Source: Macrostomum lignano (taxonomy: Eukaryota). Taken from it: 64,000 bases of DNA. Numbering within the stretch: the first letter of the stretch is position 1; each line of letters opens with the position of its first letter. Of this stretch, positions 24,135 through 63,100 are shown in pieces. The notes under the pieces are model-generated. The model had not been told where the DNA came from. It searched no databases and saw only the letters and a program-made list of their open reading frames with translations. The DNA is taken from positions 1 through 64,000 of the forward strand of contig NIVC01000513.1 in NCBI GenBank assembly GCA_002269645.1, given 5' to 3'. The translations under genes were made by a program, and so were the position numbers.

Positions 24135-24568
<434 letters not shown>

Positions 24569-33884: not shown

Positions 33885-35445
<1,561 letters not shown>

Positions 35446-36339: not shown

Positions 36340-36820
36340 CCAGCACCAGGGGCGCCAGCACCAGGGGCGCCAGCACCAGGGGCGCCAGCACCAGGGGCGC
36401 CAGCACCAGGGGCGCCAGCACCAGGGGCGCCAGCACCAGGGGCGCCAGCACCAGGGGCGCCAGCACCAGGGGCGCCAGCACCAGGGGCGCCAGCACCAGG
36501 GGCGCCAGCACCAGGGGCGCCAGCACCAGGGGCGCCAGCACCAGGGGCGCCAGCACCAGGGGCGCCAGCACCAGGGGCGCCAGCACCAGGGGCGCCAGCA
36601 CCAGGGGCGCCAGCACCAGGGGCGCCAGCACCAGGGGCGCCAGCACCAGGGGCGCCAGCACCAGGGGCGCCAGCACCAGGGGCGCCAGCACCAGGGGCGC
36701 CAGCACCAGGGGCGCCAGCACCAGGGGCGCCAGCACCAGGGGCTCCAGCACCAGGGCGCCAGCACCAAGGGGCGCCAGCACCAAGGGGCGCCAGCACCAA
36801 GGGGCGCTAGCACCAAAGGG
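36340..36820. repeat. 15/16-bp minisatellite CCAGCACCA(A)GGGGCG
   Basis: Direct reading. It switches to a 16-bp unit at the right end. Confidence 0.97.
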
Positions 36821-37354
36821 GAAGGTTTCTGCTTAATTATTATTCAGCGAGTTACAGCTACCTGGACGAGTTTCCTTATTTGGCCAGCCAGTTTCCAAAC
36901 CAGATGCTGCACCTAGAAGTCCATGACTCTGACGAAAGACAGCAAACTTGTCAGCCAGCCAACTGGTCACGGCGAGATCAAAGCAAATACAATACGATGT
37001 TTGCCCCGCGGTGGTTCGAGTTCGAAATTTTCCGAACTTATTGCCTCAACCAGTTGAACCCGAGTTGACTTGGCACTTCACAACTTGACAGGGCAGGAAT
37101 TATCCCAGAGTTGGGGCCGGTTTATTGCAGCTGCGCCTGCGAGGTTCGAATTGAGCAGCCACCCTTGGGACAATTTATTTATGCTGCTTATTTCGGGGGA
37201 AACTCGGGCATAGTAGTTTACCGTGAGTAAAAATTGCAAATATATGCAGATTTCTTGCTCTCTGGTGCGCGTAAGTTCAAAATGTGTTATTGCACTAATT
37301 CTTGAATTATTAAGACTTCTCACCGATCAAAAATACCACTGCCGACCCTCAAAC

Positions 37355-37540: not shown

Positions 37541-39029
37541 ATGCTAAGGAATCCAAGGGCCTCTGCGTCATGCATATTTACTGTTTGCTTGCAAAGTCCC
37601 AAGACTCTAATGCTGTAATCTCTGTACATATCGAAGAAAATCCCAAATTACTTCATCCAACGATAATTATAAGCGAGGAACTTGCATAATCGAGAGTAGA
37701 TATTAGTAACTTTGAGATGTTTTGCACCTGCTAGTCGCTTAAAATGAAAGATGTCTGAGTCGATACAGCACCGCGAGGCAGATATTCGCTAATTGCTGAA
37801 ATATCTCCTCTGCACCGTGACCTCCTCTTCATCTAGACTCGAATCAGCCCGAATGCGTGACTAATTGAATGCAGCAATGTTTTTTCCTCGGGGGCACGTG
37901 TGGAGGACTTGGGACTCTATATAAGCATGATTACTGCGAACGCGGTTTTCAGGTTTAATGGTGAAGTTGCCAATCACCTCAAAAACATTCTACAATTGTA
38001 ACAAATTACTTACTGAGACAGAATATTCGTTGTTTACAAATTCTACCCTACTTTCTAACCTTAATGTACATTAAACGAAAATGTACACTCACGGATTAAA
38101 TTAGTAGACTGCCCCTAAAACTTCTGAATGTACATTCCTTTTTTTCGCGCGCACCCGCCACCCCACCCTGGGCCTGTCAACTGTACTTTAACTTCTTATC
38201 TTTGCCCTGCTGAGTGTACATTCAAAAGCGCCTGTCGTTTTTCTTTTTTAGTGTAAAGTTAGGCGGGCACTTAACTACCAGCACTGCAGGTTAAGCAGAG
38301 TTGACTTTGGTTAGTCAAAGTTTCGATGATGTGAAGTTCGAAACTTATAAAGGGGACCTCAATGTAAGCCTCTATAACATTTCAGGCATCCAATATCCTA
38401 CAAAGCAATTCGACACCAGAGCTCCTGTGCAGGATTTCTCGGACAAAAATCTCTCTACAGCCGGAATGAATTTGCATACACTATGCTCGTAGAATCTAGA
38501 TAAGAGATAAAAGACCGTCTGGAGTGCTCTTCAACTCAGAAAATGTGCTCCGCAGAAAAAAACTGTCCAGTACCAACAAGTGTCTCTGTGTACGATGAAG
38601 TCGCTATTGATGAACACAGTTGATGAATAATAAACTATCCCCCAAGCCGATCTTGTCAAAGCAGTCCGACTCGCTTTGGGAATAATTTCCCAGCTCGAAA
38701 ATAGAAGCAAAGAACCGTCCAATGATATGAGTAAATTCATAAGCTTGGCCTAATTAGATTAGTTAATCACAAGTTTCGCTCTTAGCTTTTCTGATAAAAC
38801 AACGCACGCAACAGGACAAACTTCCATATATGGAAGTCCTTGAATTTGCACGGCAAACTTCTTTGAGGCCGCTCAAAGACAAAGTCATATGGGATTCTTG
38901 ACGCAGAGGTAGCTTCACATTATTTTTTGAATTTCAGCACCTAATTAAATTTATTTAAGGCAAAAAATCTATTTGCTTTAAACTTGATTCAATTTTGTCT
39001 CTTGTTATCTCTTTCGATCAGAGAGATTG

Positions 39030-39495
39030 TGGCGCCTATAGGGAGAGTGTGGCGCCATTAGAGACTGTGTGGCGCCATTACAGAGAGTGAGAGTGGGGCG
39101 CCATTAGAGACAGTGAGAGGCGCGAGAGGAGACGGTGAGAGGCGTCAGAGGAGACAGTGAGAGGCGCCAGAGGAGACAGTGAGAGGCGCCAGAGGAGACA
39201 GTGAGAGGCGCCATAGGAGACAGTGAGAGGCGCCAGAGGAGACAGTAAGAGGCGCCATAGGAGACAGTGAGAGGCGCCAGAAGAGACAGTGAGAGGCGCC
39301 AGAGGATACAGTGAGAGGCGCCAGAGGAGACAGTGAGAGGCGCCAGAAGAGACAGTGAGAGGCGCCAGAAGAGACAGTGAGAGGCGCCAGAGGATACAGT
39401 GAGAGGCGCCAGAGGATACAGTGAGAGGCGCCAGAGGATACAGTGAGAGGCGCCAGAGGAGACAGTGAGAGGCGCCAGAAGAGACAGTGAGAGTG
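39030..39495. repeat. Compound minisatellite: GTGGCGCCATTAGAGACT units grading into 22-bp GAGAGGCGCCAGAGGAGACAGT
   Basis: Direct reading. Confidence 0.93.
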
Positions 39496-40844
39496 GCAGG
39501 GTTGGCTGATGCAGGAGGCAGTTTGGCGCCAGCACTGAGTTTACCATCTGGCATCCCCCGGATGACCCCTGTTGAGCATTCCCTGAGCCCCGCCACCATT
39601 GCGACAGCTTGCCCCGTTGGGAAGCCACACAAACGAATTTCGATGAAAATCTGTGCATGCAAAATCGTTGAATAACCAGTTCGCATGAGCTGCGCCTGCA
39701 ATTCGATGCAAATCAGATTCGGGTTCCGAGTGCCAGATCGGAACGATGCGCTTAAAAAGGAATCCTCTATCACTTACTTACATCTGCCTATGCTATGTAT
39801 AGTCTAGTTATATCTCTAGTTATATCTAGTTATATCACTGTTCTGATCAAGTTCGCCGGGTGCCCTATGGAGTTTATGGAAAATTGGCCTCATTTATTTG
39901 CCATGGATTCGCCCAGATTAGTATGTTCCTTTAGGCGCAATACTACTAAGTTGGCCTCTCTGTAGTAGTACGATACGGTTTTTGAGTTTTCAGATTGTTC
40001 TCAAATTGTTGTTTAAAAAAACAATACGATGAATAAGGCGGATTAAATAAATAGAATTCTTTGATGTGAACTGTTGGACACTTCATATCCGTTGTTTTCT
40101 GACTACTCTGTGTTTCTCTCCCCTTTCCTCTCCCCTATAGCTCTTCCCTTTCCCTCTTTCCTCTCTCATCTCTCCTCTATTTCTCTTCTCTCCTCTCTCC
40201 CCTCTCTCCCCTCTCTCCTCTCTCCTCTCTCTTTCCTTTCCACAAAGAGAAGCACTCTCCTCACTTGCCACTGGTCTGCACATCTGCTCCCCTCTCTATA
40301 CCCTGACAATATCGCCCGCTGATGTACTTACAAATATTGAGCACCTTCAGGGAATCGGATTGTTTATCGCGCTGAACCTCTCTCCCAGTCCGTTACTCAG
40401 CTGCATTGCGCAGATCTAGAGAGAGGGGGAGAAAAAAGACTTCGATGCGTTTCCGGATTTCTGACAGTGCGGAAAGAGACAACGGGAGAGGGGGAGAGAG
40501 AGGGAGAGAGAGAGGCTGAGCAGACAGACAGACTGGCTGACAGGGACCAAAAGGCTTGACTGACTGACTCACTGCCTGCCGAACTCATCTTCAATCGCTC
40601 AAGTCGAGTGGTGGAGCAGCCGAGTGACGTGTTCTTTCCCCGCAATTTCCTCTTTCATAGTGACGGCCTGGCTGAAGCCTCCGTCAACTTCACAGGCGGG
40701 GTCTGACAGCAGCTCCAGGGCTCAAAGAAGTAATCATTTTTATGACGCTGAAGCGGGTAATTCTGTGGCTATAGGGAGCAGGAGGGGTATTTTGAGCTAT
40801 CGGAGGCAGTGTGGTGCTGTTAGAGACTGTGGAGTACCATTAGA

Positions 40845-41520
40845 GGGCGTGTGGCGCCATTAATGAGAGTGTGGCGCCATTAATGAGAGTGTGGCGCTAT
40901 TAATGAGAGTGTGGCGCTATTAATGAGAGTGTGGCGCTATTAATGAGAGTGTGGCGCTATTAATGAGAGTGTGGCGCTATTAATGAGAGTGTGGCGCTAT
41001 TAATGAGAGTGTGGCGCTATTAATGAGAGTGTGGCGCTATTAATGAGAGTGTGGCGCTATTAATGAGAGTGTGGCGCTATTAATGAGAGTGTGGCGCTAT
41101 TAATGAGAGTGTGGCGCTATTAATGAGAGTGTGGTGCTATTAATGAGAGTGTGGCGCTATTAATGAGAGTGTGGCGCTATTAATGAGAGTGTGGCGCCAT
41201 TAATGAGAGTGTGGCGCCATTAATGAGAGTGTGGCGCTATTAATGAGAGTGTGGCGCTATTAATGAGAGTGTGGCGCTATTAATGAGAGTGTGGCGCTAT
41301 TAATGAGAGTTTGGCGCTATTAATGAGAGTGTGGCGCTATTAATGAGAGTTTGGCGCTATTAATGAGAGTGTGGCGCTATTAATGAGAGTGTGGCGCTAT
41401 TAATGAGAGTGTGGCGCTATTAATGAGAGTGTGGCGCTATTAATGAGAGTGTGGCGCTATTAATAAGAGTGTGGCGCCATTAATGAGAGTGTGGCGCCAT
41501 TAATGAGAGTGTCGCGGCAT
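40845..41520. repeat. 20-bp minisatellite GTGGCGCTATTAATGAGAGT, ~33 copies
   Basis: Direct reading. Confidence 0.97.
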
Positions 41521-41574
41521 TAGAGACTGTGAAGCACAATTATAGACTGTGTGGCACCAGAGTTGCGTCATTAG

Positions 41575-41975
41575 AGAGAGTGTGGCGACAGAGGAGACAG
41601 TGAGAGGCGACAGAGGAGACAGTGAGAGGCGCCAGAGGAGACAGTGAGAGGCGTTAGAGGAGACAGTGAGAGGCGACAGAGGAGACAGTGAGAGGCGCCA
41701 GAGGAGACAGTGAGAGGCGTTAGAGGAGACAGTGAGAGGCGACAGAGGAGACAGTGAGAGGCGCCAGAGGAGACAGTGAGAGGCGTTAGAGGAGACAGTG
41801 AGAGGCGACAGAGGAGACAGTGAGAGGCGCCAGAGGAGACAGTGAGAGGCGTTAGAGGAGACAGTGAGAGGCGACAGAGGAGACAGTGAGAGGCGCCAGA
41901 GGAGACAGTGAGAGGCGTTAGAGGAGACAGTGAGAGGCGACAGAGGAGACAGTGAGAGGCGACAGAACAGACAGT
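41575..41975. repeat. 22-bp minisatellite GAGAGGCG(AC/CC/TT)AGAGGAGACAGT with 66-bp trimer periodicity
   Basis: Variants cycle GCGAC, GCGCC, GCGTT. Same unit family as 39100-39495. Confidence 0.95.
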
Positions 41976-42334: not shown

Positions 42335-43380
42335 CCATTGATGGTCGCCCCCTGTCTCTTGGTGAGCGCCCCCTGGCTCTCGGTGAGCGCCCCCTGGCTC
42401 TCGGTGAGCGCCCCCTGGCTCTCGGTGGGCGCCCCTGTCTCTTGGTGGCGCCCCTGTCTCTTGGTGGCGTCCCTGTCTTTTGGTGACGCCCCCTGGCTCT
42501 TGGTGGCGCCCCCTGTCTTTTGGTGAGCGCCCCTGGCTCTCGGTGGCGCCCCCTGTCTTTTGGTGAGCGCCCCCTGGCTCTCGGTTGCGCCCCCTGTCTT
42601 TTGGTGAGCGCCCCCTGGCTCTCGGTGAGCGCCCCTGGCTCTCGGTGAGCGCCCCCTGGCTCTCGGTGAGCGCCCCTGGCTCTCGGTGAGCGCCCCCTGG
42701 CTCTCGGTGAGCGCCCCCTGGCTCTCGGTGAGCGCCCCTGGCTCTCGGTGAGCGCCCCCTGGCTCTCGGTGAGCGCCCCTGGCTCTCGGTGAGCGCCCCC
42801 TGGCTCTCGGTGAGCGCCCCTGGCTCTCGGTGAGCGCCCCCTGGCTCTCGGTGGGTTCCCCCTGTCTTTTGGTGGGCGCCCCCTGGCTCTCGGTGGGCGC
42901 CCCCTGGCTCTCGGTGGCGCCCCCTGTCTTTTGGTGAGCGCCCCCTGGCTCTCGGTGGCGCCCCCTGTCTTTTGGTGAGCGCCCCCTGGCTCTCGGTTGC
43001 GCCCCCTGTCTTTTGGTGAGCGCCCCCTGGCTCTCGGTGAGCGCCCCTGGCTCTCGGTGAGCGCCCCCTGGCTCTCGGTGAGCGCCCCTGGCTCTCGGTG
43101 AGCGCCCCCTGGCTCTCGGTGAGCGCCCCCTGGCTCTCGGTGAGCGCCCCTGGCTCTCGGTGAGCGCCCCCTGGCTCTCGGTGAGCGCCCCTGGCTCTCG
43201 GTGAGCGCCCCCTGGCTCTCGGTGGGTTCCCCCTGTCTTTTGGTGGGCGCCCCCTGGCTCTCGGTGGGCGCCCCCTGGCTCTCGGTGGGCGCCCCCTGGC
43301 TCTCGGTGGGCGCCCCCTGGCTCTCGGTGAGCGCCCCCTGGCTCTCGGTGAGCGCCCCCTGGCTCTCGGTGGGCGTCCTT
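42335..43380. repeat. 21-22-bp minisatellite GAGCGCCCCCTGGCTCTCGGT / GGCGCCCCCTGTCTTTTGGT
   Basis: Direct reading. Confidence 0.95.
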
Positions 43381-44165: not shown

Positions 44166-44604
44166 TCTTTTCCAGCCTCTGTCAGTTACTACGATACATC
44201 TGGAGTCCTCAATCTCCAGCGGTGATCACAGGAGGACTGCTGAGTCTGCTGATCATGAGTTCAATTTTCAGGAACTGGGGTGGGTGGCGCATAAGCCGGC
44301 TCGCTGCTAAATAATGGCTCCGCCACCAGCCGCTGCAGATCCGGGCAGCCCGCAGTCATAATTCCGTAATTTTATTAAGATAATATCCGCAATGATCGAA
44401 CGGTCCAACAAAGCGGGCTCCTACCTCTCCTACCTGATTATCCTTCCTGCCAATGTGAAGGCGATTTGATGCAGATTAAATACCCCCTTATATACCATAA
44501 CTGAGTCTGTGGATGCTGTGGCATGCTTCATCATATTAATGCTCGCTTGGATGCTCGGCGGTTGGGGGTCATGGCATTGGGATGCAGCCAGAAAATCGCT
44601 ACTC

Positions 44605-45030
44605 AGAAAAAAATTCACTCAGAAAAGTTCAACATAGAAAAACGCTACTGAGAGAAATCACCACTCAGAAAATCGCTACTTAGAAAATCTCCACTCAAAA
44701 AAATCGCCACTCAAAAAATCACCACTCAGAAAAATCGCTATACTCAGAAAATCGCTACTCAGAAATATCACGATTCAGAAAATCGCTACTCAGAGAAATC
44801 ACTACTCAGAAAATCGCAACTCAAAAAATCGCCACGCAGAAAATGGCCACTCAGAAAATCGACACGCAGAAAATCGCCACTCAGAAAATCGCCACTCAGA
44901 AAAATCTTCACTCAGAAAAATTACCACTCAGAAAATCGCCACTCAGAAAAATCTTCACTCAGAAAAATCGCCACTCAGAAAATTGCCACTCAGAAAATCG
45001 CCACTCAGAAAATCGACACGCAGAAAATCG
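44605..45030. repeat. 15-16-bp degenerate minisatellite CAGAAAATCGCCACT
   Basis: Direct reading. Confidence 0.9.
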
Positions 45031-45494
45031 CCTCGCTCTTGATAATTAGTGCATTCGTTGGTGAGTTCGGCATTTCGATGCAAGGCATTATTGCCTGCAC
45101 CATGAATGAGTCTGGAGGTTGAGTCATCCGCCTCAGACGAAGCTCTAAACCAAAACCCGTCCTCAGAAGGGTTGGCAAGGCCACCGATAACAATCGGAAT
45201 GCTTTATTTTATGGTTTCCTCAATTAAAAAAATCACGCAAATCATCTTTTCTTATCAAGCGCATGGGCGGAAGTCAACTTTGATGCCCCGCTTCCTTGGC
45301 CTGCTCAAAAATTGAGTTATGAGGGAGCCCAAAGATGAAGGAAAGCTTTTCCAGCTTCCGATGGGAGATGTGAGAGGGAGACTGCGAGCTGAAAGTTAAT
45401 GGTTTGATGGCACTTTTAAGCCGGCTTTGTTTGAAAATTCACATTAAGAGCTCTGCATTGTGGAATGGAGAAATGAATAGCAGAAGAGTGGAAT

Positions 45495-46559: not shown

Positions 46560-46822
46560 TGTGGCGCTAAAAGGGACGCTAACCGGGGGCGCTAAAAGTG
46601 GCGTTAGAAGTGGCGCCAGAAGTGGCGCTAAATGTGGCGCTAAAACGGGCGCTAAAAAGGCGCTAAAATTGGCGCTAAACTGGTGCTAAAGTGGCTCCAA
46701 AAGTGGCGGTAATAGGGGCGCTAAACAGAATACTAAAAGTGATGCTAAAAGGGACGCTCGAAGTGACACCTAAAAGTGGCGCTAAACGGGATGCTAAAAG
46801 TGGCGCTAAAAGGGGTGCTAGA
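46560..46822. repeat. Degenerate 11-12-bp repeat AAGTGGCGCTAA upstream of SoxB1
   Basis: About 20 imperfect copies. Confidence 0.85.
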
Positions 46823-47460: not shown

Positions 47461-47479
47461 GCAATTCCTTTGCCAAGCT

Positions 47480-50400
47480 ATGGAGACAAAGGAGCTGACA
47501 GACCTTCACGAGCAGAGGCTGCGCAATGACGGCTTGCATATCTCGCCAGGTAGTTATTACCTGTCAACCGTGGGTGACCATGTCCACCGAACTGACCCAG
47601 TTCAAAGGTACGCTGCAGGGCACCAACTGCAGCAGCATGACTGCTACAGCATGGAGGACAACTCCGACGACCACGAGAGCAGCGACTGCGGCGCGAACGC
47701 GAACAACAACAACAACAGCAGCAATTGTCAGCTATCGCCTCTGATGACGTTGGCAGCCATGGGAGCACCTCAGACTGCTTCTGTGAGTCTCAGCTGTCAA
47801 CTTACTGCCTGCATGCTTATTTGAGTGTTAATATTATTAATTCTGGAATCTCTGGCGCTTTTGTTGTATCTAGTACGAGCTACATCTGGTACCCCTGTCG
47901 CCCTCACCTGGAATCCCAGTCACTCCCCACCTTGAATCCCGATTACTCACCTGGAATCCCAGTCACTCCCCACCTTGAATCCCGATTACTCACCTGGAAT
48001 CCCAGTCACTCCCCACCTTGAATCCCGATTACTCACCTGGAATCCCAGTCACTCCCCACCTTGAATCCCGATTACTCACCTGGAATCCCAGTCACTCCCC
48101 ACCTTGAATCCCGATTACTCACCTGGAATCCCAGTCACTCCCCACCTAGAATCCCGATTACTCACCTGGAATCCAGGACCTCACTCCCACCTGGAATCCC
48201 GGTCACTCTCACCTGGAATCCCGGTCACTCTCACCTGGAACCCCGATCACTCTCACCTGGAATCCCGGTCACTCTCACCTGGAACCCCGATCACTCTCAC
48301 CTGGAATCCCGGTCACTCCCCACCTGGAATCCCGGTCACTCTCACCTGGAACCCCGATCACTCTCACCTGGAATCCCGGTCACTCTCACCTGGAACCCCG
48401 ATCACTCTCACCTGGAATCCCGGTCACTCCCCACCTGGAATACCGGTCACTCCCCACCTGAAATCCCTGTCACTCCCCAACTGGAATTCCGGTCACTCCC
48501 CACCTGGAATCCCGGTCACTCTCACCTGGAATCCCGGTCACTCCCCACCTGGAATCCCGGTCACTCTCACCTGGAATCCCTGTCACTCTCACCTGGAATC
48601 CCGGTCACTCCCCACCTGGAATCCCGGTCACTCTCACCTGGAATCCCTGTCACTCCCCAACTGGAAATCCGGTCACTCCCCACCTGGAATCCCGGTCACT
48701 CGCACCTGGATCCTGGAATCCCGGTCACTCCCCACCTGGAATCCTGGTCACTCCCCACCTGGAATCCCTGTCACTCCCCAACTGGAATTCCGGTCACTCT
48801 CACCTGGAATCCCGGTCACTCTCACCTGGGATCCCGGTCACTCACCTGGAATCCCGGACCTCACTCTCACCTTGAATCCCGGTCACTCCCCACCTGGAAT
48901 TCCGGTCAGTCTCACCTGGAATCCCGGTCACTCCCCACCTGGAATCCCGGTCACTCCCCACCTGGAATCCCGGTCACTCTCACCTGGAATCCCGGTCACT
49001 CCCCACCTGGAATCCCGGTCACTCCCCACCTGGAATCCCGGTCACTCTCACCTGGGATCCCGGTCACTCACCTGGAATCCCGGACCTCACTCTCACCTTG
49101 AATCCCGGTCACTCCCCACCTGGAATTCCGGTCACTCTCACCTGGAATCCCGGTCACTCCCCACCTGGAATCCCGGTCACTCCCCACCTGGAATCCCGGT
49201 CACTCTCACCTGGAATCCCGGTCACTCCCCACCTGGAATCCCGGTCACTCCCCACCTGGAATCCCGGTCACTCTCACCTGGGATCCCGGTCACTCACCTG
49301 GAATCCCGGACCTCACTCTCACCTTGAATCCCGGTCACTCCCCACCTGGAATCCCGGTCACTCTCACTTGGTATCCCTGTCACTTCTCAAACCTATTTGC
49401 TCCATTTTTTTCGGTTCGGGTTCTATTCAATGACCACAGTTATTAATTAAGATTTTGTTAATATTTTTACAGTTCGAGGATGTCTATTACCTTTATTATA
49501 CATACACAACTGGATGTTAAAAACGTACAATATATGAACAAATCGATAATGCTTGAAATAAGACTGTGACATAACTAGTATGGGTACAGCGTGGAGTGTT
49601 GCCAAGCCTCAAATCGAAGCTTCGCTATGTGTCGCTATGTGCTGCACGTGATGCCCTGGTTACACTGGAGTGGTTCGAGAGTGGGAGAATGAATTAGAAA
49701 TTCGAGTTCCTAATATTACCTGGCGAAGCCCGAGGACCGAACTGCTACAATCCCCGTAGCTAATAAGGGAGCGGAGGAGTGGAGGAGGCAGGTGACACGA
49801 GCAGGTGTTGGGGCCCTAGCAACCAGCCTGTATGCCGCAGCTGGGCGCGTTGGCGGGCAAGCCCCAATCCGATTACTCACTGCGCTACTCACAGTGGTGG
49901 TTGAATCGAATCAATGAGTATGATAATTGGGTCTTATATAGAGTCCATGGGGCTGCATGTGGACAAATTTGCCCTCAAGGCTTGTTTGGTAGGTAAGAAA
50001 TGAAATAATTGAGGCTATTTTCGGTTCAGAGGGCTCGCTAGTAAAATTCCAGTAATGTACCAAACAGTCGCGGACGAGCAGATCGACCACAAACTTGTTT
50101 AATTTGCCAGTAGCTTTGGTCTTGGTGCTGGCGCCCCTTGGTGCTGGCGCCCCTTGGTGCTGGCGCCCCTTGGTGCTGGCGCCCCTTGGTGCTGGCGCCC
50201 CTTGGTGCTGGCGCCCCTTGGTGCTGGCGCCCCTTGGTGCTGGCGCCCCTTGGTGCTGGCGCCCCTTGGTGCTGGCGCCCCTTGGTGCTGGCGCCCCTTG
50301 GTGCTGGCGCCCCTTGGTGCTGGCGCCCCTTGGTGCTGGCGCCCCTTGGTGCTGGCGCCCCTTGGTGCTGGCGCCCCTTGGTGCTGGCGCCCCTTGGTGC

Positions 50401-51013
50401 TGGCGCCCCTTGGTGCTGGCGCCCCTTGGTGCTGGCGCCCCTTGGTGCTGGCGCCCCTTGGTGCTGGCGCCCCTTGGTGCTGGCGCCCCTTGGTGCTGGC
50501 GCCCCTTGGTGCTGGCGCCCCTTGGTGCTGGCGCCCCTTGGTGCTGGCGCCCCTTGGTGCTGGCGCCCCTTGGTGCTGGCGCCCCTTGGTGCTGGCGCCC
50601 CTTGGTGCTGGCGCCCCTTGGTGCTGGCGCCCCTTGGTGCTGGCGCCCCTTGGTGCTGGCGCCCCTTGGTGCTGGCGCCCCTTGGTGCTGGCGCCCCTTG
50701 GTGCTGGCGCCCCTTGGTGCTGGCGCCCCTTGGTGCTGGCGCCCCTTGGTGCTGGCGCCCCTTGGTGCTGGCGCCCCTTGGTGCTGGCACCAACGTTTCT
50801 TTTGAGACACCTTTGTAATTTATTGACATTTGCCATTATTGGCCCGAATGGTGGTGCTACAATGAGGTTTCATAAAAACTTGTACAAGAGAAGTTGTTGC
50901 ACTAATAAAAATGAGATGATTTATATTGCCAATCTTCTCCATTGATTTTTTGTCCAGTTCGCTACAACGGGAAAACAGCAGCAATACCAGCACCAGCAGC
51001 TGCCGCCGCAGCC

Positions 51014-51068
<55 letters not shown>

Positions 51069-51643
51069 GTTCCGACAACCGCCAAGCTCGAGGACCGTGT
51101 CAAACGCCCGATGAACGCCTTCATGGTGTGGAGCCGGGGCCAGCGCCGCAAGATGGCCCAGGAGAACCCGAAGATGCACAACTCGGAGATCAGCAAGCGC
51201 CTGGGCTCGGACTGGAAGAGCCTCTCCGAGTCCGAGAAGCGGCCATTCATCGACGAAGCGAAACGTCTGCGCGCGATGCACATGAAGGACCATCCGGACT
51301 ACAAGTACCGGCCGAGGCGCAAGGCTAAGACGCTGGTGAAGCGGCAGGATCGTTACGCGGTGGCTGCTGCTGCTGCGGCTGCGGCTGCAGCAGCGGTGGT
51401 GACAGCAGGCCAACAGCAGCAGCCAGCATCGGCTCCGCCAGCTCCAGCGGTTGCTCAGCAACCGGGGGCAGTTTATGCGGCCCAGAGTCAGCCGCTGCAT
51501 CAGCTGGACGAGTCTGAGTTGCACTATCAGCATCAGCAGGCTTATCATCAGCCTCCTGGCTACTTGCCGTCTGGTTATCACCCCGACATTCAGCATCAAC
51601 AGCTGGCCCAGCAGGCGCATTGGCACCCGATGTACATGACAGC

Positions 51644-51679
<36 letters not shown>

Positions 51680-51785
51680 ACATCCGTTTGTTGACTTAAA
51701 CCAGATGCACATGCAGATGTACACAATGCACTATGCTCAGTCTGGCATGGATTCTACAGGTCAAACTCTTCTAGGTGATATGTAG
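47480..51785 (+). CDS. SoxB1: SoxB1-class HMG-box transcription factor, 2 exons (47480-47782, 50958-51785), 376 aa
   Basis: The HMG box [38 protein letters not shown]...[15 protein letters not shown] is nearly identical to SOX2. R-V-K-R-P and the lack of the B2-type P in RRKxK favour B1. The intron TCT|GTGAGT...GTCCAG|TTC is phase 0. Exon 1 assignment is less certain than the HMG exon. Confidence 0.88.
47895..49385. repeat. 22/23-bp minisatellite CCTGGAATCCCGGTCACTC(T/CC)CA in the SoxB1 intron
   Basis: Direct reading. A ~226-bp higher-order repeat occurs near 48830-49300. Confidence 0.96.
50120..50790. repeat. 16-bp minisatellite CTTGGTGCTGGCGCCC, ~42 perfect copies, in the SoxB1 intron
   Basis: Direct reading. 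Confidence 0.98.
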
Positions 51786-54141: not shown

Positions 54142-57100
54142 TCACATCTGGTGTAGGGAGGATGACATCCCGGATACGCCATAGCTGGGCATGACCATTC
54201 GGTCCAAGCTCTGGAACAGCATCGCCTGCTGGTCTGCGGGCGGCATTCCAGAAACGGGTTTCCAGCTGATTTACGTGTGCAAAACAATTTCTAATTGATG
54301 CTCGGAGAACCGGCCAAAAACACAACAGAGAATCGGCCAAAAACACAACAGAGAATCGGCCAAGGACACCACAGAGAATCGGCCAAGGACACCACAGAGA
54401 ATCGCCAAAGACACAACAGAGAATCGCCAAAGACACCACAGAGAATCGCCAAAGACACCACAGAGAATCGGCCAAGGACACCACAGAGAATCGCCAAAGA
54501 CACCACAGAGAATCGGCCAAGGACACCACAGAGAATCGCCAAAGACACAACAGAGAATCGGCCAAGGACACTGCAGACAATCGCCCAAAGACACCGCAGA
54601 CAATCGCCCAAAGAAACCACAGAGAATCGCCCAAAGACATTGCAGAGAATCGCCCAAGGACAACACAGAGAATCGCCAAAGACACCACAGAGAATCGCCA
54701 AAGACACAACAGAGAATCGCCAAAGACACCACAGAGAATCGCCAAAGACACCACAGAGAATCGGCCAAGGACACCACAGAGAATCGCCAAAGACACCACA
54801 GAGAATCGGCCAAGGACACCACAGAGAATCGCCAAAGACACAACAGAGAATCGGCCAAGGACACTGCAGACAATCGCCCAAAGACACCGCAGACAATCGC
54901 CCAAAGAAACCACAGAGAATCGCCCAAAGACATTGCAGAGAATCGCCCAAGGACAACACAGAGAATCGCCCAAGGACAACACAGAGAATCGCCCGAAGAT
55001 ACCACAGAGAATCGCCCAAAGAAACTGCAGACGATCGCCCAAAGACACTACAGAGAATCAGTCAAGGACACCACAGAGAATCGCCAGAAGATCCCCCACA
55101 GAGAATCGCCCAAAGACACCACAGAGAATCGCACAAGGACACTGCAGACAATCGGCCAAAGACACTACAGAGAATCGCCCAAAGACACCACAGAGAATCG
55201 GCCAAGGACACCACAGAGAATCGGCCAAGGACACCACAGAGAATCGCCCAAGGACACTACAGAGAATCGCCCAAAGACACCACAGAGAATCATCTAAAGA
55301 CATCACAGAGAATCATCCAAAGAAACCACAGATAATCGTCCAAAGACACCACATGCAGAGAATAGCCGAAAGACACCAAAAAACCGTTTGCCTTCAACTG
55401 CTGCATCTACACTCACCTGGCGGGATGTGGTGCAACTCGCACTGTTTCCGAACAAAGTCAGCTATGACTTCTCGTCGCAGCTCGAGGCCTTGCATTTTGG
55501 TGACAAACGAACTGCAATGTTGAATTCATTTGGGCGGAGGGCTCACTGTCGCTTCAGAAACTTTATAAGAACTTTGGAAAATCAGAAGTTTTTGTGCGAT
55601 ACACAATCAACACATGCACACAGGGATAAGCAAAATAAATAGAACTATTTTGCTGATTACCACCTAGCCTGAGCACATACTTCTCAAGCGTACAGGCGCA
55701 CCAATACTGTACACAAAGGCACGCACTCATTGGGGGTTGGCCCTCATTTCTGTGATTCGCACGACAACCCCGGCTGATTTTCGCGCAGAAGAATTGGATT
55801 TCTCTAAAACTCATAAAATTATAATTTAATTTTTAATCAATAATTACTCAGGGAAATTTCTACCCTAGAAAACCTTCAATTTTACTGAAGCCTGAAAGTT
55901 TCACTATGCACAAATATTACGTTTTTCATTTCTTGATGGATTCCGAATGCATCGCGCGATTGATTTTACGCATTTAAACAAATTGAGTTCCAATTTGAAA
56001 ATAGATCGAGGGCAATGATTTTTTGAAAATTGTCAATCAATCTGCGAAATTGCTGCTCGGGTGATGCCAGAGCTTCCAATCCAGGTCACTTGAAATATCT
56101 GACTCTGAATAACCCTGAAAACATTTCGGTTGATACTTCACTCAATTCAACTCTGCACACTGCATCTCAATCCGCGTAGGTGAGCACAGTCAATGCTCAA
56201 GAGCTTTGCAGAGCCAGGAGCATTCTCAACCGAAATTCTGTGTGACAACGCAGATGCAGCTGCGTTACCTTTTTCTATATATAAATGAAGCCTCATCTTC
56301 ATCTCAACCAGCCTCTCTCAAAGAGTGGAACGGTTGAGCCTAATTTGAATAGAATTTCTGCCAGCAGCAGCAGCAGCAGCAGAAGCAGCCGCTTCAAGCA
56401 GACAGTTTGCAGACTTTTCGACGCCAAGAATTTCCCGTTCCGGAGAGCTGGCCGCTGCTGCTCAGGCGGAGTTGGGCGCCGGGGCTGACTCAGGGCGGCC
56501 CCCCCCGCTGCCTTCACTTCCTCTGTTGTGGGCTTGGGGTGGCCGTCAGGGCAGCGGCATTGTCAGGCGGACCTGCTTTTTCTCCGCAGCTACCCAGGCA
56601 AAGCTGAAAGCTGGATATTCTTCTTCTGCTTTTCCCCTCCTCTTTGCATGGCCTTAGAGGCAGCTGGTTACACACTGCCTGCCTTCTGGCTTTGAAGAAT
56701 ACTCACAAACAAGCAGTTCATAATAAGTTGCCGATTCTGAAGCAGCCAAGATAGAGTCTTGGGGAGTCCTCTGCCCCCTCTCCGGCTTGATTAAAATTGC
56801 CGTTCATTAAAGTTGTTTCTTTCTTCGGACACAATGCGGCCTGCGTTTTGGCCTCACGCGGCGCGGCACAGCGGGTGCCTGGCATTGGGGCCGCTAATTA
56901 ATGCGAACAAATAGAATATTAAAGTGGCGATTCTGTTTTGTCTTGTCAAACACAACAGCTGCGGGGGCAGAGGCTGTAACTAAGGATGTCAAGAATGTTT
57001 CTGGACTGACAGCAAGTGGTGCACAGGAGCAGAGAGAGCGTACGCTCTCAAAAAGATTAACATCTTCAAAATTCCAAGGCGCTTCATTCAGGTTTTAACA

Positions 57101-60100
57101 ACTTTGAAGCCTTTTTTAATTGGCTGAATAATCATTATGTCAAACTTTCATGCAGGCTGAATGTTTACAAAGTAATTCAGTAAGTCAAATTTTCATTTAA
57201 GAGTTCTTCTCTTTAGAAAAGGGCGCCATTTCATTAAGGGGTGGCGCCATTTCATCTGAGGGGGCTCCATTTCATCTGATGGGACGTCATTTCATCTGAG
57301 GGGGGCGCCATTTCATCTGACGGGGCGCCATTTCATCTGAGGGGGGCGCCATTTCATCTGAGGGGGCGCCATTTCATCTGAGGGGGGCGCCATTTCATCT
57401 GAGGGGGCGCCATTTCATCTGAGGGGGCGCCATTTCATCTGAGGGGGCGCCATTTCATCTGAGGGGGCGCCATTTCATCTGAGGGGGCGCCATTTCATCT
57501 GAGGGGGCGCCATTTCATCTGAGGGGGGCGCCATTTCATCTGAGGGGGGCTCCATTTCATCTGAGGGGGCGCCATTTCATCTGAGGGGGGCGCCATTTCA
57601 TCTGAGGGGGGCGCCATTTCATCTGAGGGGGCGCCATTTCATCTGAGGGGGGCGCCATTTCATCTGAGGGGGGCGCCATTTCATCTGAGGGGGCTCCATT
57701 TCATCTGAGGGGGGCTCCATTTCATCTGAGGGGGGCGCCATTTCATCTGAGGGGGGCGCCATTTCATCTGAGGGGGGCGCCTTTTCATCTGAGGGGGCAC
57801 CTTTTTATTTGAGGTGATGCTAAATCAACTGCAGTACAGCCCTTGGTCTGTACTTTTAATCTGGAAATCTATTTATTCGTTGCCTATCTCGATGATAAAA
57901 AAGTAAGATCAATATGATTTCGAAAGCAGGAAAGTTAGCAAATTATCATAGTTACTGTTTGCTACTGTCTATCACTAATTTTTATAATGTTAAAAACGCG
58001 CATTGTGCTACTCATAGTACATGCTAAAACTGTGTGCATCCATTGTTCCCTTTAGTCTAAGCTGCTCAATTTCAGCGAAATAATGCCATAATTACACGCG
58101 CATCTCAGCTCACCTGATGAGGGCGGTGATCCGGTACGATGACTGGTCGTAGCTCCCCGTCCTGAAAGTTTTCAATTTAGGGAATCTCATGAGTGGAAAT
58201 CTAATGAAGATTCGAGTCTCATTGAGAGCCAGTCTTCACAAGCTGAGATAAAGATTAGTGAAAAAATCATGAAAAGACGAGTCACAGCTCAAGGAGATAA
58301 TCTCATATGGAGAAGGGAAAGAAGATTAATTTTTAAGGGGATAATCTCATAGGTTGGAGAATCTCATGGGTTAGAGAATCTCACGGGCTGGAGAATCTCA
58401 GGTTGGAGAATCTCATAGGTTAGAGAATCTCAGGTTGGAGAATCTCATAGTTTGGAGGATCTCACTGGCTGGATACTCTCATGGGGCTGAAGAATCTCAC
58501 GTTTTGGAGGATCTCATTGGTAGGAGAATCTCACAGGTTGGAGAATCTCATAGGTTGGAGAATCTCACGGGTTGGAGAATCTCACAGGTTGGAGAATCTC
58601 ATAGGTTGGAGAATCTCATAGGTAGGAGAATCTCACGGGTTGGAGAATCTCACGGGTTGGAGAATCTCACGGGTTGGAGAATCGCACGTTTTGGAGGATT
58701 TCATAGGTTGGAGAATATCATAGGTTGGAGAATCTCACGGGTTGGAGAATCTCACAGGTTGGAGAATCTCACGGGTTGGAGAATCTCATAGGTTGGAGAA
58801 TCTCACGGGTTGGAGAATCTTACGGGTTGGAGAATCGCGCCTGGTGCTGAAATATTTCACTGTCTCCTTATTTATACATGAATTACTTGGAGAAAAAATT
58901 GTTATAAGCTGTTTATTATGCTACTGTAAGTAAGCGACATGCGTATGAGAACCGGTCCCCAGCCCGGGACCCCACCTGGAGCGCTGCTCGGCCTCGAGAG
59001 CGTCGGCGAATGCGGCAGTCCAGAACCGCTGCGACTGCCAGATGCCCTGGTCCTTCAGGTAGTTGTACAGGTAGGTCTTGCGGTCCGAGGTGAACTGGTT
59101 CGATGGCACTGGGGGGATCAGGGCGTCAGGTGTCAGATTAACGATGCTCTGAGTGTCACATTAGCGATGCTTTGAGTGTCAGATTAGCGATGCTTTGAGT
59201 GTCAGATTAGCGATGATTTGGGTGTCAGATTAGCGATGATTTGGGTGTCAGATTAGCGATGATTTGGGTGTCAGATTAGCGATGATTTGGGTGTCAGATT
59301 AGCGATGATTTGGGTGTCAGATTAGCGATGATTTGGGTGTCAGATTAGCGATGATTTGGGTGTCAGATTAGCGATGATTTGGGTGTCAGATTAGCGATGA
59401 TTTGGGTGTCAGATTAGCGATGATTTGGATGTCAGATTAGCGATGATTTGGGTGTCAGATTAGCGATGATTTGGGTGTCAGATTAGCGATGATTTGGGTG
59501 TCAGATTAGCGATGATTTGGGTGTCAGATTAGCGATGATTTGGGTGTCAGATTAGCGATGATTTGGGTGTCAGATTAGCGATGATTTGGGTGTCAGATTA
59601 GCGATGATTTGGGTGTCAGATTAGCGATGATTTGGGTGTCAGATTAGCGATGATTTGGGTGTCAGATTAGCGATGATTTGGGTGTCAGATTAGCGATGAT
59701 TTGGGTGTCAGATTAGCGATGATTTGGGTGTCAGATTAGCGATGCTTTAAGTGTCAGATTAGCGATGCTTTGGGTGTCAGATTAGCGATGATTTGGGTGT
59801 CAGATCTACAAAGCTGTGGGTGTCAGGGATGACAAAGGAGTCCCAGGGTTTCCAGGAGTGGCCTCGGGCAGCTCACTGGTGTAAAACACGAAGGCGGCAT
59901 CCAGCAGAGCCCTGGCGGAGCGCCAGTCCTCGGCGAGGCTGCACTCCATCAGGGCAGCCGCCAGGCTCTGCGCCATGGCGTAGAAGGCCGACTCGTCAAG
60001 TCTGTCGGCGAAGCCGCCTCCAATGCCGCGACTCTGCTGCTGCTGTTGGTACATCTCCAGGGCCTTGACGAACCAGACTCGGCCTGGCAGCTTCTGAAAT

Positions 60101-63100
60101 CAAGGAATAGAGGATGATGTTTTAACATTTGGCGCCACCGATAGACAATTTTGATGGCGTCTGGATTCTGATTCATGGACAAAAAATTTGTTTCTAGCGC
60201 CTCTCACTAAACAGATTTCGGCGCCTCTCACTAAACAGATTTCGGCGCCACCAATAAACAGATTTCGGCGCCACCAATAAACTGATTTCGGCGCCACCAA
60301 AAAATCGACTTCGGCGCCACCAATAAACCGACTTCGGCACCACCAATAAACTGATTTCGGCGCCACCAATAAACCGCTTTCGGCGCCATCAATAAACCGA
60401 TTTTGGCGCCACATTTAAACTGATTTCGGCGCCACCAATAAACTGATTTCGGCGCCACCAATAAACCGATTTCGGCGCCACCAATAAACTGATTTCGGCG
60501 CCACCAATAAACCGATTTCGGCGCCACCAATAAACTGATTTCGGCGCCACCAATAAACCGATTACGGCGCCACGAATAAACTGATTTCGGCGCCACCAAT
60601 AAACCGATTTCGGCGCCATCAATAAACTGATTTTGGCGCTACCAATAAACTGATTTCGGCGCCACCAATAAACCGCTTTCGGCGCCATCAATAAACCGAT
60701 TTTGGCGCCACATTTAAACTGATTTCGGCGCCACCAATAAACCGATTTCGGCGCCACCAATAAACCGATTTCGGCGCCACCAATAAACTGATTTCGGCGC
60801 CACCAATAAACCGATTTCGGCGCCACCAATAAACTGATTTCGGCGCCACCAATAAACCGATTACGGCGCCACGAATAAACTGATTTCGGCGCCACCAATA
60901 AACCGATTTCGGCGCCATCAATAAACTGATTTTGGCGCTACCAATAAACTGATTTCGGCGCCATTATTAAACTGATTTCGGCGCCACCAATAAACCGCTT
61001 TCGGCGCCATCAATAAACCGATTTCGGCGCCACCAATAAACTGATTTCGGCGCCATCAATAAACTGATTTCGGCGCCATCAATAAACCGATTTCGGCGCC
61101 ACCAATAAACCGATTTCGGCGCCATCAATAAACTGATTTAGGCGCCACCAATAAACCGATTTCGGCGCCACCAATAAACCGATTTCGGCGCCACCAATAA
61201 ACTGATTTCGGCGCCACCAATAAACCGCTTTCGGCGCCACCAATAAACTGATTTCGGCGCCACCAATAAACTGATTTCGGCGCCACCAATAAACTGATTT
61301 CGGCGCCACCAATAAACCGATTTCGGCGCCACCAATAAACTGATTTCAGCGCCACCAATAAACTGATTTCGGCGCCACCAATAAACCGCTTTCGGCGCCA
61401 TCAATAAACCGATTTCGGCGCCACCAATAAACCGATTTCGGCGCCACCAATAAACCGATTTCGGCGCCACCAATAAACTGATTTCGGCGCCACCAATAAA
61501 CCGATTTCGGCGCCACCAATAAACTGATTTCGGCGCCACCAATAAACTGATTTCGGCGCCACCAATAAACTGATTTCGGCGCCACCAATAAACTGATTTC
61601 GGCGCCACCAATAAACCGCTTTCAGCGCCACCAATAAACTGATTTCGGCGCCACCAATAAACCGCTTTCGGCGCCATCAATAAACCGAATTCGGCGCCAC
61701 CAATAAACCGATTTCGGCGCCACCAATAAACTGATTTCGGCGCCACCAATAAACTGATTTCGGCGCCACCAATAAACCGATTTCGGCGCCACCAATAAAC
61801 TGATTTCGGCGCCACCAATAAACCGATTTCGGCGCCACCAATAAACCGATTTCGGCGCCACCAATAAACTGGTTTCAGCGCCACCAATAAACTGACTTCG
61901 GCGCCACCAATAAACCGCTTTCGGCGCCATCAATAAACCGATTTCGGCGCCACCAATAAACTGATTTCGGCGCCACCAATAAACTGATTTCGGCGCCACC
62001 AATAAACTGATTTCGGCGCCACCAATAAACTGATTTCGGCGCCACCAATAAACTGATTTCGGCGCCACCAATAAACTGATTTCGGCGCCACCAATAAACT
62101 GATTTCGGCGCCACCAATAAACTGATTTCGGCGCCACCTATAAACCGATTTCGGCGCCACCAATAAACTGATTTCGGCGCCACCAATAAACCGAATTCGG
62201 CGCCGCCAATAAACCGCTTTCGGCGCCATCAATAAACTGATTTCGGCGCCACCAATAAACCGATTTCGGCGCCACCAATAAACCGATTTCGGCGCCACCA
62301 ATAAACTGATTTCGGCGCCATCAATAAACAGATTTTATTGACGTCTGAATCTTATTCACAATTTTTAACTTCAACATCAAATTTTCTCACCTGACACATC
62401 CTTGAAAAGTTGGCCTTGTCCGGCTGACCCATCATGTGACTGCAATGATCAGATTAGTCATCAACTTTTGCCGAACTTTTATAGCAGAATAGTTAAGCAT
62501 TGTTCAACCGTCCTCACCTCCTATTGATGACCAGATCCACATACTTGGTCATGAACTCGCGGCACATCTGCACGCCCGGGTCACTCAGGTCCTCCGCCTT
62601 CTGCCATTCGAGACTCATCGGCCCGGAGATGCCGCCGCCGACATTCCAGCCGCCGTCATCTCGCCATCCGCCGACGCCGCCTCCACCGACACCTCCGATG
62701 CCGCCGTCCAGCTGCTGCATCTGGGGGTCCATGCCGGCCAGGGACTGCCGGCGGACCAGCGCTAAACTGTCGGTGCCGCCGAGGCCACCGAAGCCTCCTC
62801 CGGACATCATCCAGCGCTCCTGCTGCTGCTGCTGCGGCTGCGACGGCGGCGGACCTCCGGCTTCGAACCTGGCGGAGCCGTAGCTGGTCGGCAGCACGCT
62901 GGTGCTCAGGCGCGAGCCGGGCAGCTGGTAGGTGCGAAACTCCTGGCTGAACATGGGCTGCTGCTGCGGCTGTTGCTGCTGCTGTTGTTGCTGGTCAAAC
63001 CCACCAGAGTCCAAGCCCAGCCCTTGGCTGTAGGTTGCCACAATCTCCCGCGAGAGACTCGACATGTTCCACGAGCCTCCGCCAGTCAGAGGGTCGCCGC

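What the first reader, a model, noticed from the sequence alone, without database searches (positions are those of the whole stretch)
36340..62335. About ten unrelated minisatellites converge on a GGCG(CC) core around SoxB1: candidate repeat-built regulatory platform
Arrays with different unit lengths and otherwise different sequence share the core: 36.3 (GGGGCGCCAG), 39.0 and 41.6 (GAGGCGCCAG), 40.8 (GTGGCGCTAT/CCAT), 42.3 (GGCGCCCC), 46.6 (GTGGCGCTAA), 50.1 (CTGGCGCCCC), 57.2 (GGGCGCCATTT), 60.2 (TCGGCGCCAC), and on the minus strand 44.6 and 54.3 (TGGCGATT). None of the arrays from 19.8 to 35.5 kb has it. Together they supply roughly 300 CpG-containing copies within ~15 kb of a developmental regulator. 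GCCAT(TT) is the YY1/Pho core and TGGCGC resembles E2F sites. One hypothesis is that tandem repeats here build CpG-island or Polycomb-response-like domains. An alternative is that GGCGCC seeds repeat expansion. Both are inference.
Basis: partly seen in the sequence, partly recalled or inferred. Interest (0 to 1): 0.72.

Follow-up and report, generated by a model that had tools for sequence, protein, structure and literature searches.

The report
Flatworm minisatellites sharing a GGCGCC core
Half of a 26-kb stretch around a SoxB gene of the flatworm Macrostomum lignano is variable tandem repeats, and many share a short self-complementary (T)GGCGC(C) motif; the sharing is real, but it looks like ordinary local repeat evolution, not a demonstrated gene-control device.

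Summary
The window is the first 64 kb of Macrostomum lignano contig NIVC01000513.1. All the arrays exist at the stated coordinates. Twelve arrays between 36.3 and 62.3 kb carry GGCG/CGCC in about 350 units, and no array between 19.8 and 35.5 kb does.

"Unrelated" is only half right. 36340 and 50121 are one family in inverted orientation. 39020/40849 and 39107/41584 are one lineage, joined by transitional units and present as a duplicated block. About five to eight groups remain, and these share only a ~7-nt core. That sharing survives a look-elsewhere test (P<1/300).

The regulatory reading finds no support:
- E2F, YY1 and CTCF consensus strings are essentially absent.
- Background CpG is not depleted (o/e 0.88).
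- The core is not protected within arrays.
- Copy numbers differ up to five-fold between two genomic copies.
- The arrays at 13.8-41.6 kb share a different core, GACAG/CTGTC, so neighbouring arrays share cores in general.

The self-complementary core does let single strands form in-register hairpins (z -2.5 versus 0).

Best reading: a locally evolving minisatellite cluster, with shared ancestry plus possible amplification bias.

The parts
36340..36815 (-). Array G1a: 15-mer CCAGCACCAGGGGCG, 31.7 copies. TGGCGCC reads on the minus strand. The last units are 16-mers identical to the 50121 unit.
39020..39089 (+). A-type 20-mer, 3.5 degenerate copies (AGAGAswGTGTGGCGCCATT). It grades into the B-type array through a 26-nt unit at about 39080-39106.
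39107..39493 (-). B-type 22-mer GAGACAGTGAGAGGCGCCAGAG, 17.6 copies. It carries both the GGCGCC core and the GACAG core.
40849..41516 (+). A-type 20-mer GTGTGGCGCTATTAATGAGA, 33.4 copies. GGCGCT is the major form; GGCGCC occurs in 6 units. Degenerate GTGTGGCGCCATTAGAGACT units sit at both edges.
41584..41975 (-). B-type 22-mer organised as a 66-bp higher-order repeat (GGCGAC / GGCGCC / GGCGTT), 17.8 copies.
42346..43375 (-). 21-mer CGCCCCCTGGCTCTCGGTGAG, 49 copies, with a 41-bp higher-order repeat. The minus strand reads CCAGGGGGCGCT.
44589..45032 (-). Degenerate 15-mer CAGAAAATCGCCACT, 29.6 copies, 79% matches. The core (TGGCGATT) occurs in only 7-8 units.
46561..46820 (+). Degenerate 12-mer GTGGCGCTAAAA, 21.7 copies, 72% matches. 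GGCG occurs in 13 units.
47480..47782 (+). SoxB gene exon 1 (METKELT...QTAS). A GTGAGT splice donor follows at 47783.
50121..50788 (+). Array G1b: 16-mer CTTGGTGCTGGCGCCC, 41.8 copies, 100% pure. It lies inside the Sox intron and ends 170 bp before exon 2. It is the reverse complement of the 36340 unit.
50958..51785 (+). SoxB gene exon 2: poly-Q tract, HMG box and C-terminal part. A ttttttgtccag splice acceptor precedes it.
54305..55353 (-). 23-mer GAGAATCGGCCAAAGACACCACA, 45.6 copies. CGCC occurs in 28 units and AATCGCCA in 12. It lies inside the range of an annotated minus-strand gene.
57221..57797 (-). 21/20-mer GGGCGCCATTTCATCTGAGGG, 27.5 copies. This is the only array with GCCAT in most units.
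60208..62335 (-). 23-mer TAAACTGATTTCGGCGCCACCAA, 92.5 copies here against 17.6 in the second genomic copy.

Best explanation
This is a dense cluster of ordinary, copy-number-unstable minisatellites in a genome unusually rich in them. The arrays turn over locally by replication slippage and unequal exchange. New arrays arise from variant units at array edges and from short-range duplication or inversion of array pieces. Neighbouring arrays therefore inherit short pieces of a common unit. The (T)GGCGC(C) core is such an inherited piece. It may persist because it is self-complementary and GC-rich: it lets a single strand fold back on the next unit exactly in register, which would favour slippage by whole units and so favour amplification of units that keep it. 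No role in Sox regulation is needed.

Shown:
- the arrays, their relationships and their variability between two genomic copies;
- the statistical over-sharing of the core;
- the predicted hairpin potential.

Inferred:
- common ancestry of the groups that share only the core;
- the amplification bias.
For: - The species and locus are identified. A second genomic copy, 95-97% identical, keeps every array in place with the same consensus. Copy numbers differ widely: 92.5 vs 17.6, 49 vs 24, 17.8 vs 5.8, 4.9 vs 13.4.
- Descent is direct for six arrays. 36340 equals the reverse complement of 50121. The A-type 20-mer grades into the B-type 22-mer. The A-B composite occurs twice, and its junctions align at 83%.
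- Neighbouring arrays share more 5- and 6-mers than distant ones (P 0.006-0.02).
- A second core, GACAG/CTGTC, is shared by ten arrays from 13.8 to 41.6 kb. The B-type unit carries both cores and so bridges the two domains.
- The core is not protected from variation within arrays. This fits inheritance or drive better than purifying selection on a binding site.
- Single-stranded DNA of the TGGCGC arrays folds into inter-unit hairpins through the core. Mean z is -2.46 against -0.06 for arrays without it (P 3e-4).
- Tandem and simple repeats make up 15% of this genome (PMC5730564).
Against: - Between the 5-8 groups, no similarity beyond about 7 nt is detectable once the extended core is held fixed (P 0.17-0.3). 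Ancestry of those groups is assumed, not shown.
- The unique flanks of the arrays share no homology.
- Arrays without the core in the same region (37355, 45494, 47903, 51918, 58339, 59129) are just as pure and just as variable in copy number. The core is therefore not required for amplification.
- Copy-number divergence between the two copies is not significantly larger for core arrays (P 0.47).
- A better fold than shuffles is partly built in for any repeated 6-bp GC palindrome.
- Everything rests on one 64-kb window plus one near-identical copy.
Confidence: 0.5

Rival explanations
1. Repeat-built regulatory platform. The arrays present hundreds of binding sites for a factor that recognises (T)GGCGC(C), such as a YY1/Pho-like, E2F-like, CxxC-type or lineage-specific zinc-finger protein. 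Together they set up a Polycomb-like or otherwise special chromatin domain around the SoxB gene.
For: - The core is over-shared among otherwise dissimilar arrays.
- The core arrays lie on both sides of the Sox gene and inside its intron, spanning 36.3-62.3 kb with the gene at 47.5-51.8 kb.
- One array (57221) has GCCAT in 22 of 27 units.
Against: - No known consensus that I tested is shared by the arrays.
- The core is not less variable than the rest of the unit.
- Site number is unconstrained between two genomic copies, up to 5-fold.
- The background is not CpG-depleted.
- A different core is shared by arrays upstream, next to a GPCR gene.
- Unique DNA between the arrays is not enriched for the core.
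- No chromatin or binding data are available.
Confidence: 0.1
2. Protein-recognised instability or recombination signal. The core is the target of a factor that initiates breaks or exchange, in the way the human minisatellite core and PRDM9 motifs are linked to hotspot activity. Any sequence containing it tends to become, and stay, a minisatellite.
For: - Convergent-looking sharing of a 6-7-nt core among groups with no other similarity.
- Large copy-number differences between the two copies.
Against: - Copy-number divergence is not significantly higher for core arrays.
- Single-copy TGGCGCC sites in unique DNA (12602, 14765, 15450, 47375) are not expanded.
- Many coreless arrays sit in the same region.
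- No candidate protein has been identified.
Confidence: 0.12
3. The arrays are pieces of dispersed, transposon-borne tandem-repeat families, for example arrays carried by Helitron/Helentron-like or other elements. The shared core would come from the element rather than from local evolution.
For: - The window holds several transposon remnants, including an ORF with a replication-protein-A OB domain, of the kind I recall being reported in Helitrons (the Helitron association is from memory, untested here).
- Distant arrays share unit pieces: 18811 versus 44589 (GAAAATCrCC) and 54305 versus 58339 (GAGAATC). This comes from direct reading of the consensus units.
Against: - The array flanks share no homology with each other, and no terminal structures were seen.
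- Each array family occurs once or twice in the window.
- This could not be tested genome-wide.
Confidence: 0.13
4. Chance plus composition: GC-rich units in a genome without CpG depletion happen to share a short motif.
For: - After the most conservative merging of related arrays, only 3 independent families keep TGGCGC.
- The contrast between the right and left halves falls to P 0.12 when groups are counted.
Against: A composition-aware look-elsewhere test gives P<1/300 with 6 families, and also with 5.
Confidence: 0.1

Closest known systems
Core-sharing hypervariable minisatellite families (Jeffreys et al. 1985, human; cited from my own knowledge)
   Same: Many tandem arrays with different unit lengths and sequences share a short GC-rich core and are highly variable in copy number. 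The core was proposed as a signal that promotes array instability.
   Different: - The core here is (T)GGCGC(C), a 6-bp palindrome, not the human GGGCAGGAxG-type core.
- The arrays are physically clustered within 26 kb, and half are demonstrably related by descent.
- No recombination data exist.
- The organism is a flatworm.
Hairpin-prone tandem repeats (CNG triplet repeats, palindromic AT-rich repeats; cited from my own knowledge)
   Same: Self-complementary elements let a single strand fold back in register with the repeat. Such folding is an established route to slippage (searches show the predicted folds).
   Different: - Stems here are only 6 bp (up to 12 imperfect bp in 50121) with 4-17-nt loops, so stability is marginal.
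- No instability measurements tie the effect to the core.
Polycomb response elements built from clustered Pho/YY1 sites (Drosophila; cited from my own knowledge)
   Same: Multiple copies of a short CG-containing motif near a developmental transcription-factor gene.
   Different: - GCCAT is the majority form in only one of twelve arrays, and the extended YY1 consensus occurs in none.
- PREs are not tandem minisatellites.
- No chromatin data exist.
CTCF-site tandem arrays (e.g. DXZ4/Firre-type macrosatellites in mammals; cited from my own knowledge)
   Same: RKGGCGCY, the 3' half of the CTCF consensus, is present in most units of seven arrays. 42346 carries CCAGGGGGCGCT.
   Different: - The full consensus occurs in no unit.
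- There is no orientation pattern around the gene.
- CTCF is reported missing from Platyhelminthes (PMC7021899, PMC10658182).

Membership tests
Minisatellite / VNTR | Head-to-tail tandem copies of a 10-100-bp unit | tested here: met
   TRF finds periods of 12-23 bp, 3.5-92.5 copies and 72-100% matches.
Minisatellite / VNTR | Copy number varies between alleles or genomic copies | tested here: met
   Window versus L002 (95-97% identical in unique DNA): 8 of 11 core arrays and 6 of 7 coreless arrays differ by more than one copy, by up to 5-fold.
Core-sharing minisatellite superfamily (Jeffreys type) | Arrays of otherwise dissimilar units share a short core more often than chance | tested here: met
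   TGGCGC/GCGCCA occurs in 5-6 families, look-elsewhere P<1/300. Similarity between groups is confined to about 7 nt. Caveat: independence of the families is uncertain.
Core-sharing minisatellite superfamily (Jeffreys type) | The core promotes recombination or instability | tested here: inconclusive
   Copy-number divergence of core versus coreless arrays: median |ln ratio| 0.46 versus 0.18, P 0.47. Real mutation rates are not measurable here.
Polycomb response element | Clustered Pho/YY1 sites (GCCAT core, extended AANATGGCG) | tested here: not met
   GCCAT is the majority form only in 57221 (22 of 27 units). AANATGGCG occurs in 0 of about 414 units (the consensus strings are from memory).
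Polycomb response element | H3K27me3 / PcG protein occupancy | not testable with these tools
   No chromatin data are accessible.
CpG island | CpG-rich segment standing out from a CpG-depleted, methylated genome | tested here: not met
   CpG o/e in non-array DNA is 0.88 overall and 0.78-0.94 by segment. Only low 5mC is reported in M. lignano (PMC10658182).
E2F site cluster | TTTSSCGC consensus | tested here: not met
   6 of about 414 units match.
CTCF site array | Full consensus CCASYAGRKGGCRSY in the units | tested here: not met
   No match. The 3' half AGRKGGCRS occurs only in 42346 (33 of 49 units) and 57221 (9 of 27).
CTCF site array | The organism encodes CTCF | not tested
   The literature reports no CTCF in flatworms (PMC7021899, PMC10658182).

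The most novel reading that the evidence does not exclude
(T)GGCGC(C) is a genuine 'minisatellite core' of Macrostomum. It would be a short signal, read either by a sequence-specific protein or through its own hairpin, that makes any unit containing it prone to tandem amplification. Unrelated sequences would then converge on it genome-wide. Dense core arrays, such as those around and inside this SoxB gene, would in turn create a distinct chromatin or recombination domain.
Probability: 0.12. Interest if true: 0.6.

Novelty: new member of a known kind. Interest (0 to 1): 0.3.

Why it matters
The question of why minisatellites share cores has been open since the 1980s. If the core sharing holds genome-wide, M. 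lignano could address it: the animal is transgenic-tractable, and tandem and simple repeats make up 15% of its genome. One could mutate the core in a defined array and measure its stability. One could also delete the intronic array and read out Sox expression. As it stands, the locus mainly shows that neighbouring minisatellites in this genome are related and exchange or inherit motifs. That matters for repeat annotation, for assembly of this hidden polyploid, and for not over-reading repeated 'binding sites' next to developmental genes.

Tried and rejected
1. **CTCF half-site idea (my own lead).** RKGGCGCY is common in the arrays. But the full consensus is absent, there is no orientation pattern, and flatworms are reported to lack CTCF. 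Dropped.
2. **tRNA-primer-site idea.** The 7-nt core might have derived from an LTR-element primer-binding site. The intact Copia element in the window has an unrelated sequence next to its LTR. Dropped.
3. **Segmental duplication with flanks.** A self-BLAST with the arrays masked found no homology between array flanks in 36-62 kb.
4. **Sampling other M. lignano loci for a genome-wide baseline.** This failed. The GPCR ORF gave no scored hits. The Copia polyprotein gave only hits of 57% identity or less from other organisms. Exact look-ups of the Copia and GPCR ORFs found nothing on record. Protein searches were then exhausted.
5. **Metagenome scan for two units of the 36340/50121 family.** It returned only ten contigs of 60-71% GC carrying 2-4 units each, probably bacterial and unrelated.
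6. **Rfam.** No RNA family matched anywhere in the window.
7. **Exact 11-13-mers shared between groups.** AGTGAGAGGCGCC, for example, is shared between the B-type arrays and the edge of 60208. These looked like bridges of descent, but they are no more frequent than expected once the extended core is held fixed.
8. **First unit-splitting attempt.** The fuzzy-regex method skipped most units. I replaced it with alignment to a consensus concatemer.
9. **Literature.** I found no paper on Macrostomum minisatellites.
Full report
**Source and setting**

The HMG-box exon at 50958-51785 matches one named protein far better than any other: Macrostomum lignano BOX15_Mlig030826g2. The contig that carries that gene is identical to window 37480-61785, and record position 37480 equals window position 37480. 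The window is therefore the first 64 kb of NIVC01000513.1 in assembly Mlig_3_7.

The gene has two exons:
- Exon 1 is 47480-47782, followed by a GTGAGT splice donor.
- Exon 2 is 50958-51785, preceded by ttttttgtccag.

Two arrays, 47903 and 50121, therefore lie in its 3.2-kb intron. The protein belongs to the SoxB group. Its best named relatives include both Sox-2-like and Sox-14/21-like proteins, so I did not resolve B1 versus B2.

An annotated minus-strand gene spans 54142 to beyond 61785 and so contains the arrays from 54.3 to 62.3 kb. Arrays make up 47% of 18.8-64 kb and 49.5% of 36.3-62.3 kb. Tandem and simple repeats make up 15% of this genome (PMC5730564).

**The observation**

Counting GGCG/CGCC gives about 350 core-bearing units in twelve arrays between 36340 and 62335. 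The arrays between 19.8 and 35.5 kb have none. TGGCGCC occurs 235 times against 5.1 expected, almost entirely inside these arrays.

Two of the twelve arrays are weak members:
- 44589 carries AATCGCCA in 7 of 30 units.
- 54305 carries it in 12 of 46 units, and its consensus is CGGCC.

In 41584 the 'CC' of the core alternates as AC / CC / TT within a 66-bp higher-order repeat. The unique DNA between arrays is not enriched for the motif: TGGCGC occurs 12 times against 9.9 expected, and GCGCCA 10 against 10.4.

**Are the arrays unrelated?**

They are not all unrelated.
- Anchoring the units on the core shows that 36340(+) and 50121(-) are the same unit with a one-base indel (ccagcacca[a]ggGGCG). 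The right end of 36340 contains the 16-mer form. The flank match has P 0.0005.
- 39107 and 41584 are the same 22-mer.
- 39020 and 40849 are the same 20-mer.
- The raw sequence shows the 20-mer grading into the 22-mer through a 26-nt unit.
- The A-to-B junctions of the two blocks (39000-39165 and 41478-41640) align at 83% identity through degenerate, non-periodic units. The A-B composite was therefore duplicated or split.

Six arrays thus form two lineages. For the remaining groups I looked for similarity beyond the core. The groups are the 36340/50121 pair, the A/B lineage, 42346, 44589, 46561, 54305, 57221 and 60208.
- Ungapped flank matches are at chance, except for a marginal 39020-57221 match (P 0.027).
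- The 11-13-nt exact matches that link groups exceed a naive null (P 0.001).
- They do not exceed the null once one or two bases on each side of GGCG are held fixed (P 0.17-0.3).

Between groups, then, the similarity is a roughly 7-nt extended core and nothing more that can be detected.

**Is the sharing more than chance?**

I used a look-elsewhere test that scores every k-mer against the composition of each unit.
- TGGCGC/GCGCCA is the most over-shared 6-mer among 27 array families. It occurs in 6 families (nominal p 5e-8). None of 300 shuffled sets is as extreme.
- With the A and B lineages merged, it occurs in 5 families and the result holds.
- With 46561 and 57221 also merged into the A/B lineage, it falls to 3 families and is no longer the top motif.

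The contrast between the right and left halves of the window is strong when arrays are counted (12 of 21 versus 0 of 13, P 0.0006). It is weak when conservative groups are counted (5 of 14 versus 0 of 9, P 0.12). So the sharing is real, but its strength depends on how independent the families are.

**A second core**

GACAG/CTGTC (AGACAG as a 6-mer) is shared by ten arrays from 13.8 to 41.6 kb. These include the (ACAG)n and (TGTC)n microsatellites and the arrays at 19.9, 24.9, 26.6 and 30 kb.

The B-type 22-mer carries both cores. Arrays that are close neighbours share more 5-mers and 6-mers than distant ones (permutation P 0.006-0.02). This holds with the obvious same-family pairs removed. Core sharing is therefore a property of neighbourhoods in this window, not of the Sox gene.

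**Tests of the regulatory reading**

- *Binding-site consensus strings (recalled from memory).* E2F TTTSSCGC occurs in 6 of about 414 units. YY1 AANATGGCG occurs in none. GCCAT is the majority form only in 57221. The full CTCF consensus occurs in none, and its 3' half occurs only in 42346 and 57221. CTCF is reported absent from flatworms (PMC7021899, PMC10658182).
- *CpG islands.* CpG o/e in non-array DNA is 0.88, so CpG-bearing repeats do not stand out from a depleted background. Only low 5mC is reported in this species.
- *Constraint within arrays.* Per-position variation shows the core is more variable than the rest of the unit in six arrays, less variable in three, and invariant along with everything else in two.
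- *Constraint on dose.* A second genomic copy on NIVC01000157.1 is 95-97% identical in unique DNA and keeps every array in place with the same consensus. Copy numbers differ freely: 60208 has 92.5 versus 17.6 copies, 42346 has 49 versus 24, and 41584 has 17.8 versus 5.8. The coreless array 37355 has 4.9 versus 13.4.

None of this excludes protein binding, but nothing supports it.

**Tests of the 'core favours expansion' reading**

- GGCGCC is self-complementary. One hundred nucleotides of each TGGCGC array, folded as single-stranded DNA, pair each core with the next one. In 50121 the pairing forms 12-bp imperfect hairpins with 4-nt loops.
- The z-scores against dinucleotide shuffles average -2.46 for the eight TGGCGC arrays and -0.06 for nine coreless arrays (P 3e-4).
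- This is partly built in for any repeated GC palindrome.
- Copy-number divergence between the two genomic copies is larger for core arrays (median |ln ratio| 0.46 versus 0.18) but not significantly so (P 0.47).
- Coreless arrays in the same region are equally pure.

**Conclusion**

The best-supported account is a locally evolving cluster of unstable minisatellites. Array pieces are duplicated, inverted and remodelled over a few kilobases, so neighbours carry common motifs. The self-complementary GGCGCC core may additionally be favoured during amplification.

The regulatory-platform idea is unsupported, and the named transcription-factor resemblances fail at the consensus level. A protein-read instability signal or a transposon origin cannot be excluded.

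The decisive test is a genome-wide census of array families and their cores, plus the orthologous loci in other Macrostomum species. I could not run it, because no route to further M. lignano sequence was available.

Noticed in passing
window 13830-41975 (arrays 13830, 18811, 19868, 24136, 24893, 26597, 29973, 33882, 39107, 41584): A second shared core, GACAG/CTGTC (AGACAG as a 6-mer), runs through ten arrays, including the (ACAG)n and (TGTC)n microsatellites. The 22-mer at 39107/41584 carries both this core and GGCGCC.
   Followed up: partly
window 2354-7458: An apparently intact Copia-type LTR retrotransposon on the minus strand. It has a 1301-aa uninterrupted gag-pol ORF (3255-7160) and 195-bp LTRs that are 98% identical (2354-2546 and 7264-7458). 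The closest database proteins are only 57% identical, and none is from M. lignano.
   Followed up: partly
window 14762-15184 (-): A 140-aa ORF with a replication-protein-A OB domain (PF16900, E 5e-10), lying among short dispersed repeats (11815-12064 ~ 13560-13825; 14106-14200 ~ 16028-16122). It may be a piece of a Helitron-like element.
   Followed up: no
window 9231-11312 (+): Fragments of a second retroelement: a gag-like ORF and a reverse-transcriptase ORF (PF00078, E 2e-25), broken across frames.
   Followed up: no
window 31644-33290 (+): A 548-aa single-exon rhodopsin-family GPCR ORF (PF00001, E 9e-29), wedged between two large arrays. The large protein search returned no hit at E<=1e-5, and the exact protein is not on record as a called gene.
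   Followed up: partly
window 50976-51067 and 51640-51678: CAG (poly-Q) tracts in Sox exon 2. The genome encodes a longer first poly-Q run than the deposited protein P0001, which the look-up flags as 'does not translate to query'. The two deposited copies (368 and 369 aa) also differ by one Asn in a poly-N run. The coding microsatellites are therefore variable as well.
   Followed up: partly
window 62514-63992 (-), array 63561-63998: The 21-bp array at the window end lies in frame inside a 492-aa ORF and encodes about 20 copies of a 7-residue repeat (MGSQxGQ) in a Q/G-rich protein with no Pfam match. This is a coding minisatellite. It probably belongs to the annotated gene of more than 1000 aa whose range covers the arrays from 54.3 to 62.3 kb.
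   Followed up: partly
window 50121-50788; L002 12627-13390: The intronic 16-mer array is 100% pure in both genomic copies (41.8 and 47.8 units), whereas the flanking unique DNA differs by about 3%. The array was therefore homogenised or expanded very recently.
   Followed up: partly
window 19363-19764 (+): A 133-aa ORF with weak, below-threshold similarity to the C-terminal part of SAM-dependent methyltransferase domains. It is probably one exon of a gene between the 18811 and 19868 arrays.
   Followed up: no
window 24136-24568 vs 33882-35445; 36340-36815 vs 50121-50788: Two pairs of same-family arrays lie in inverted orientation 10-14 kb apart: (ACAG)n versus (TGTC)n, and the 15/16-mer pair. 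This hints at local inverted duplications.
   Followed up: no
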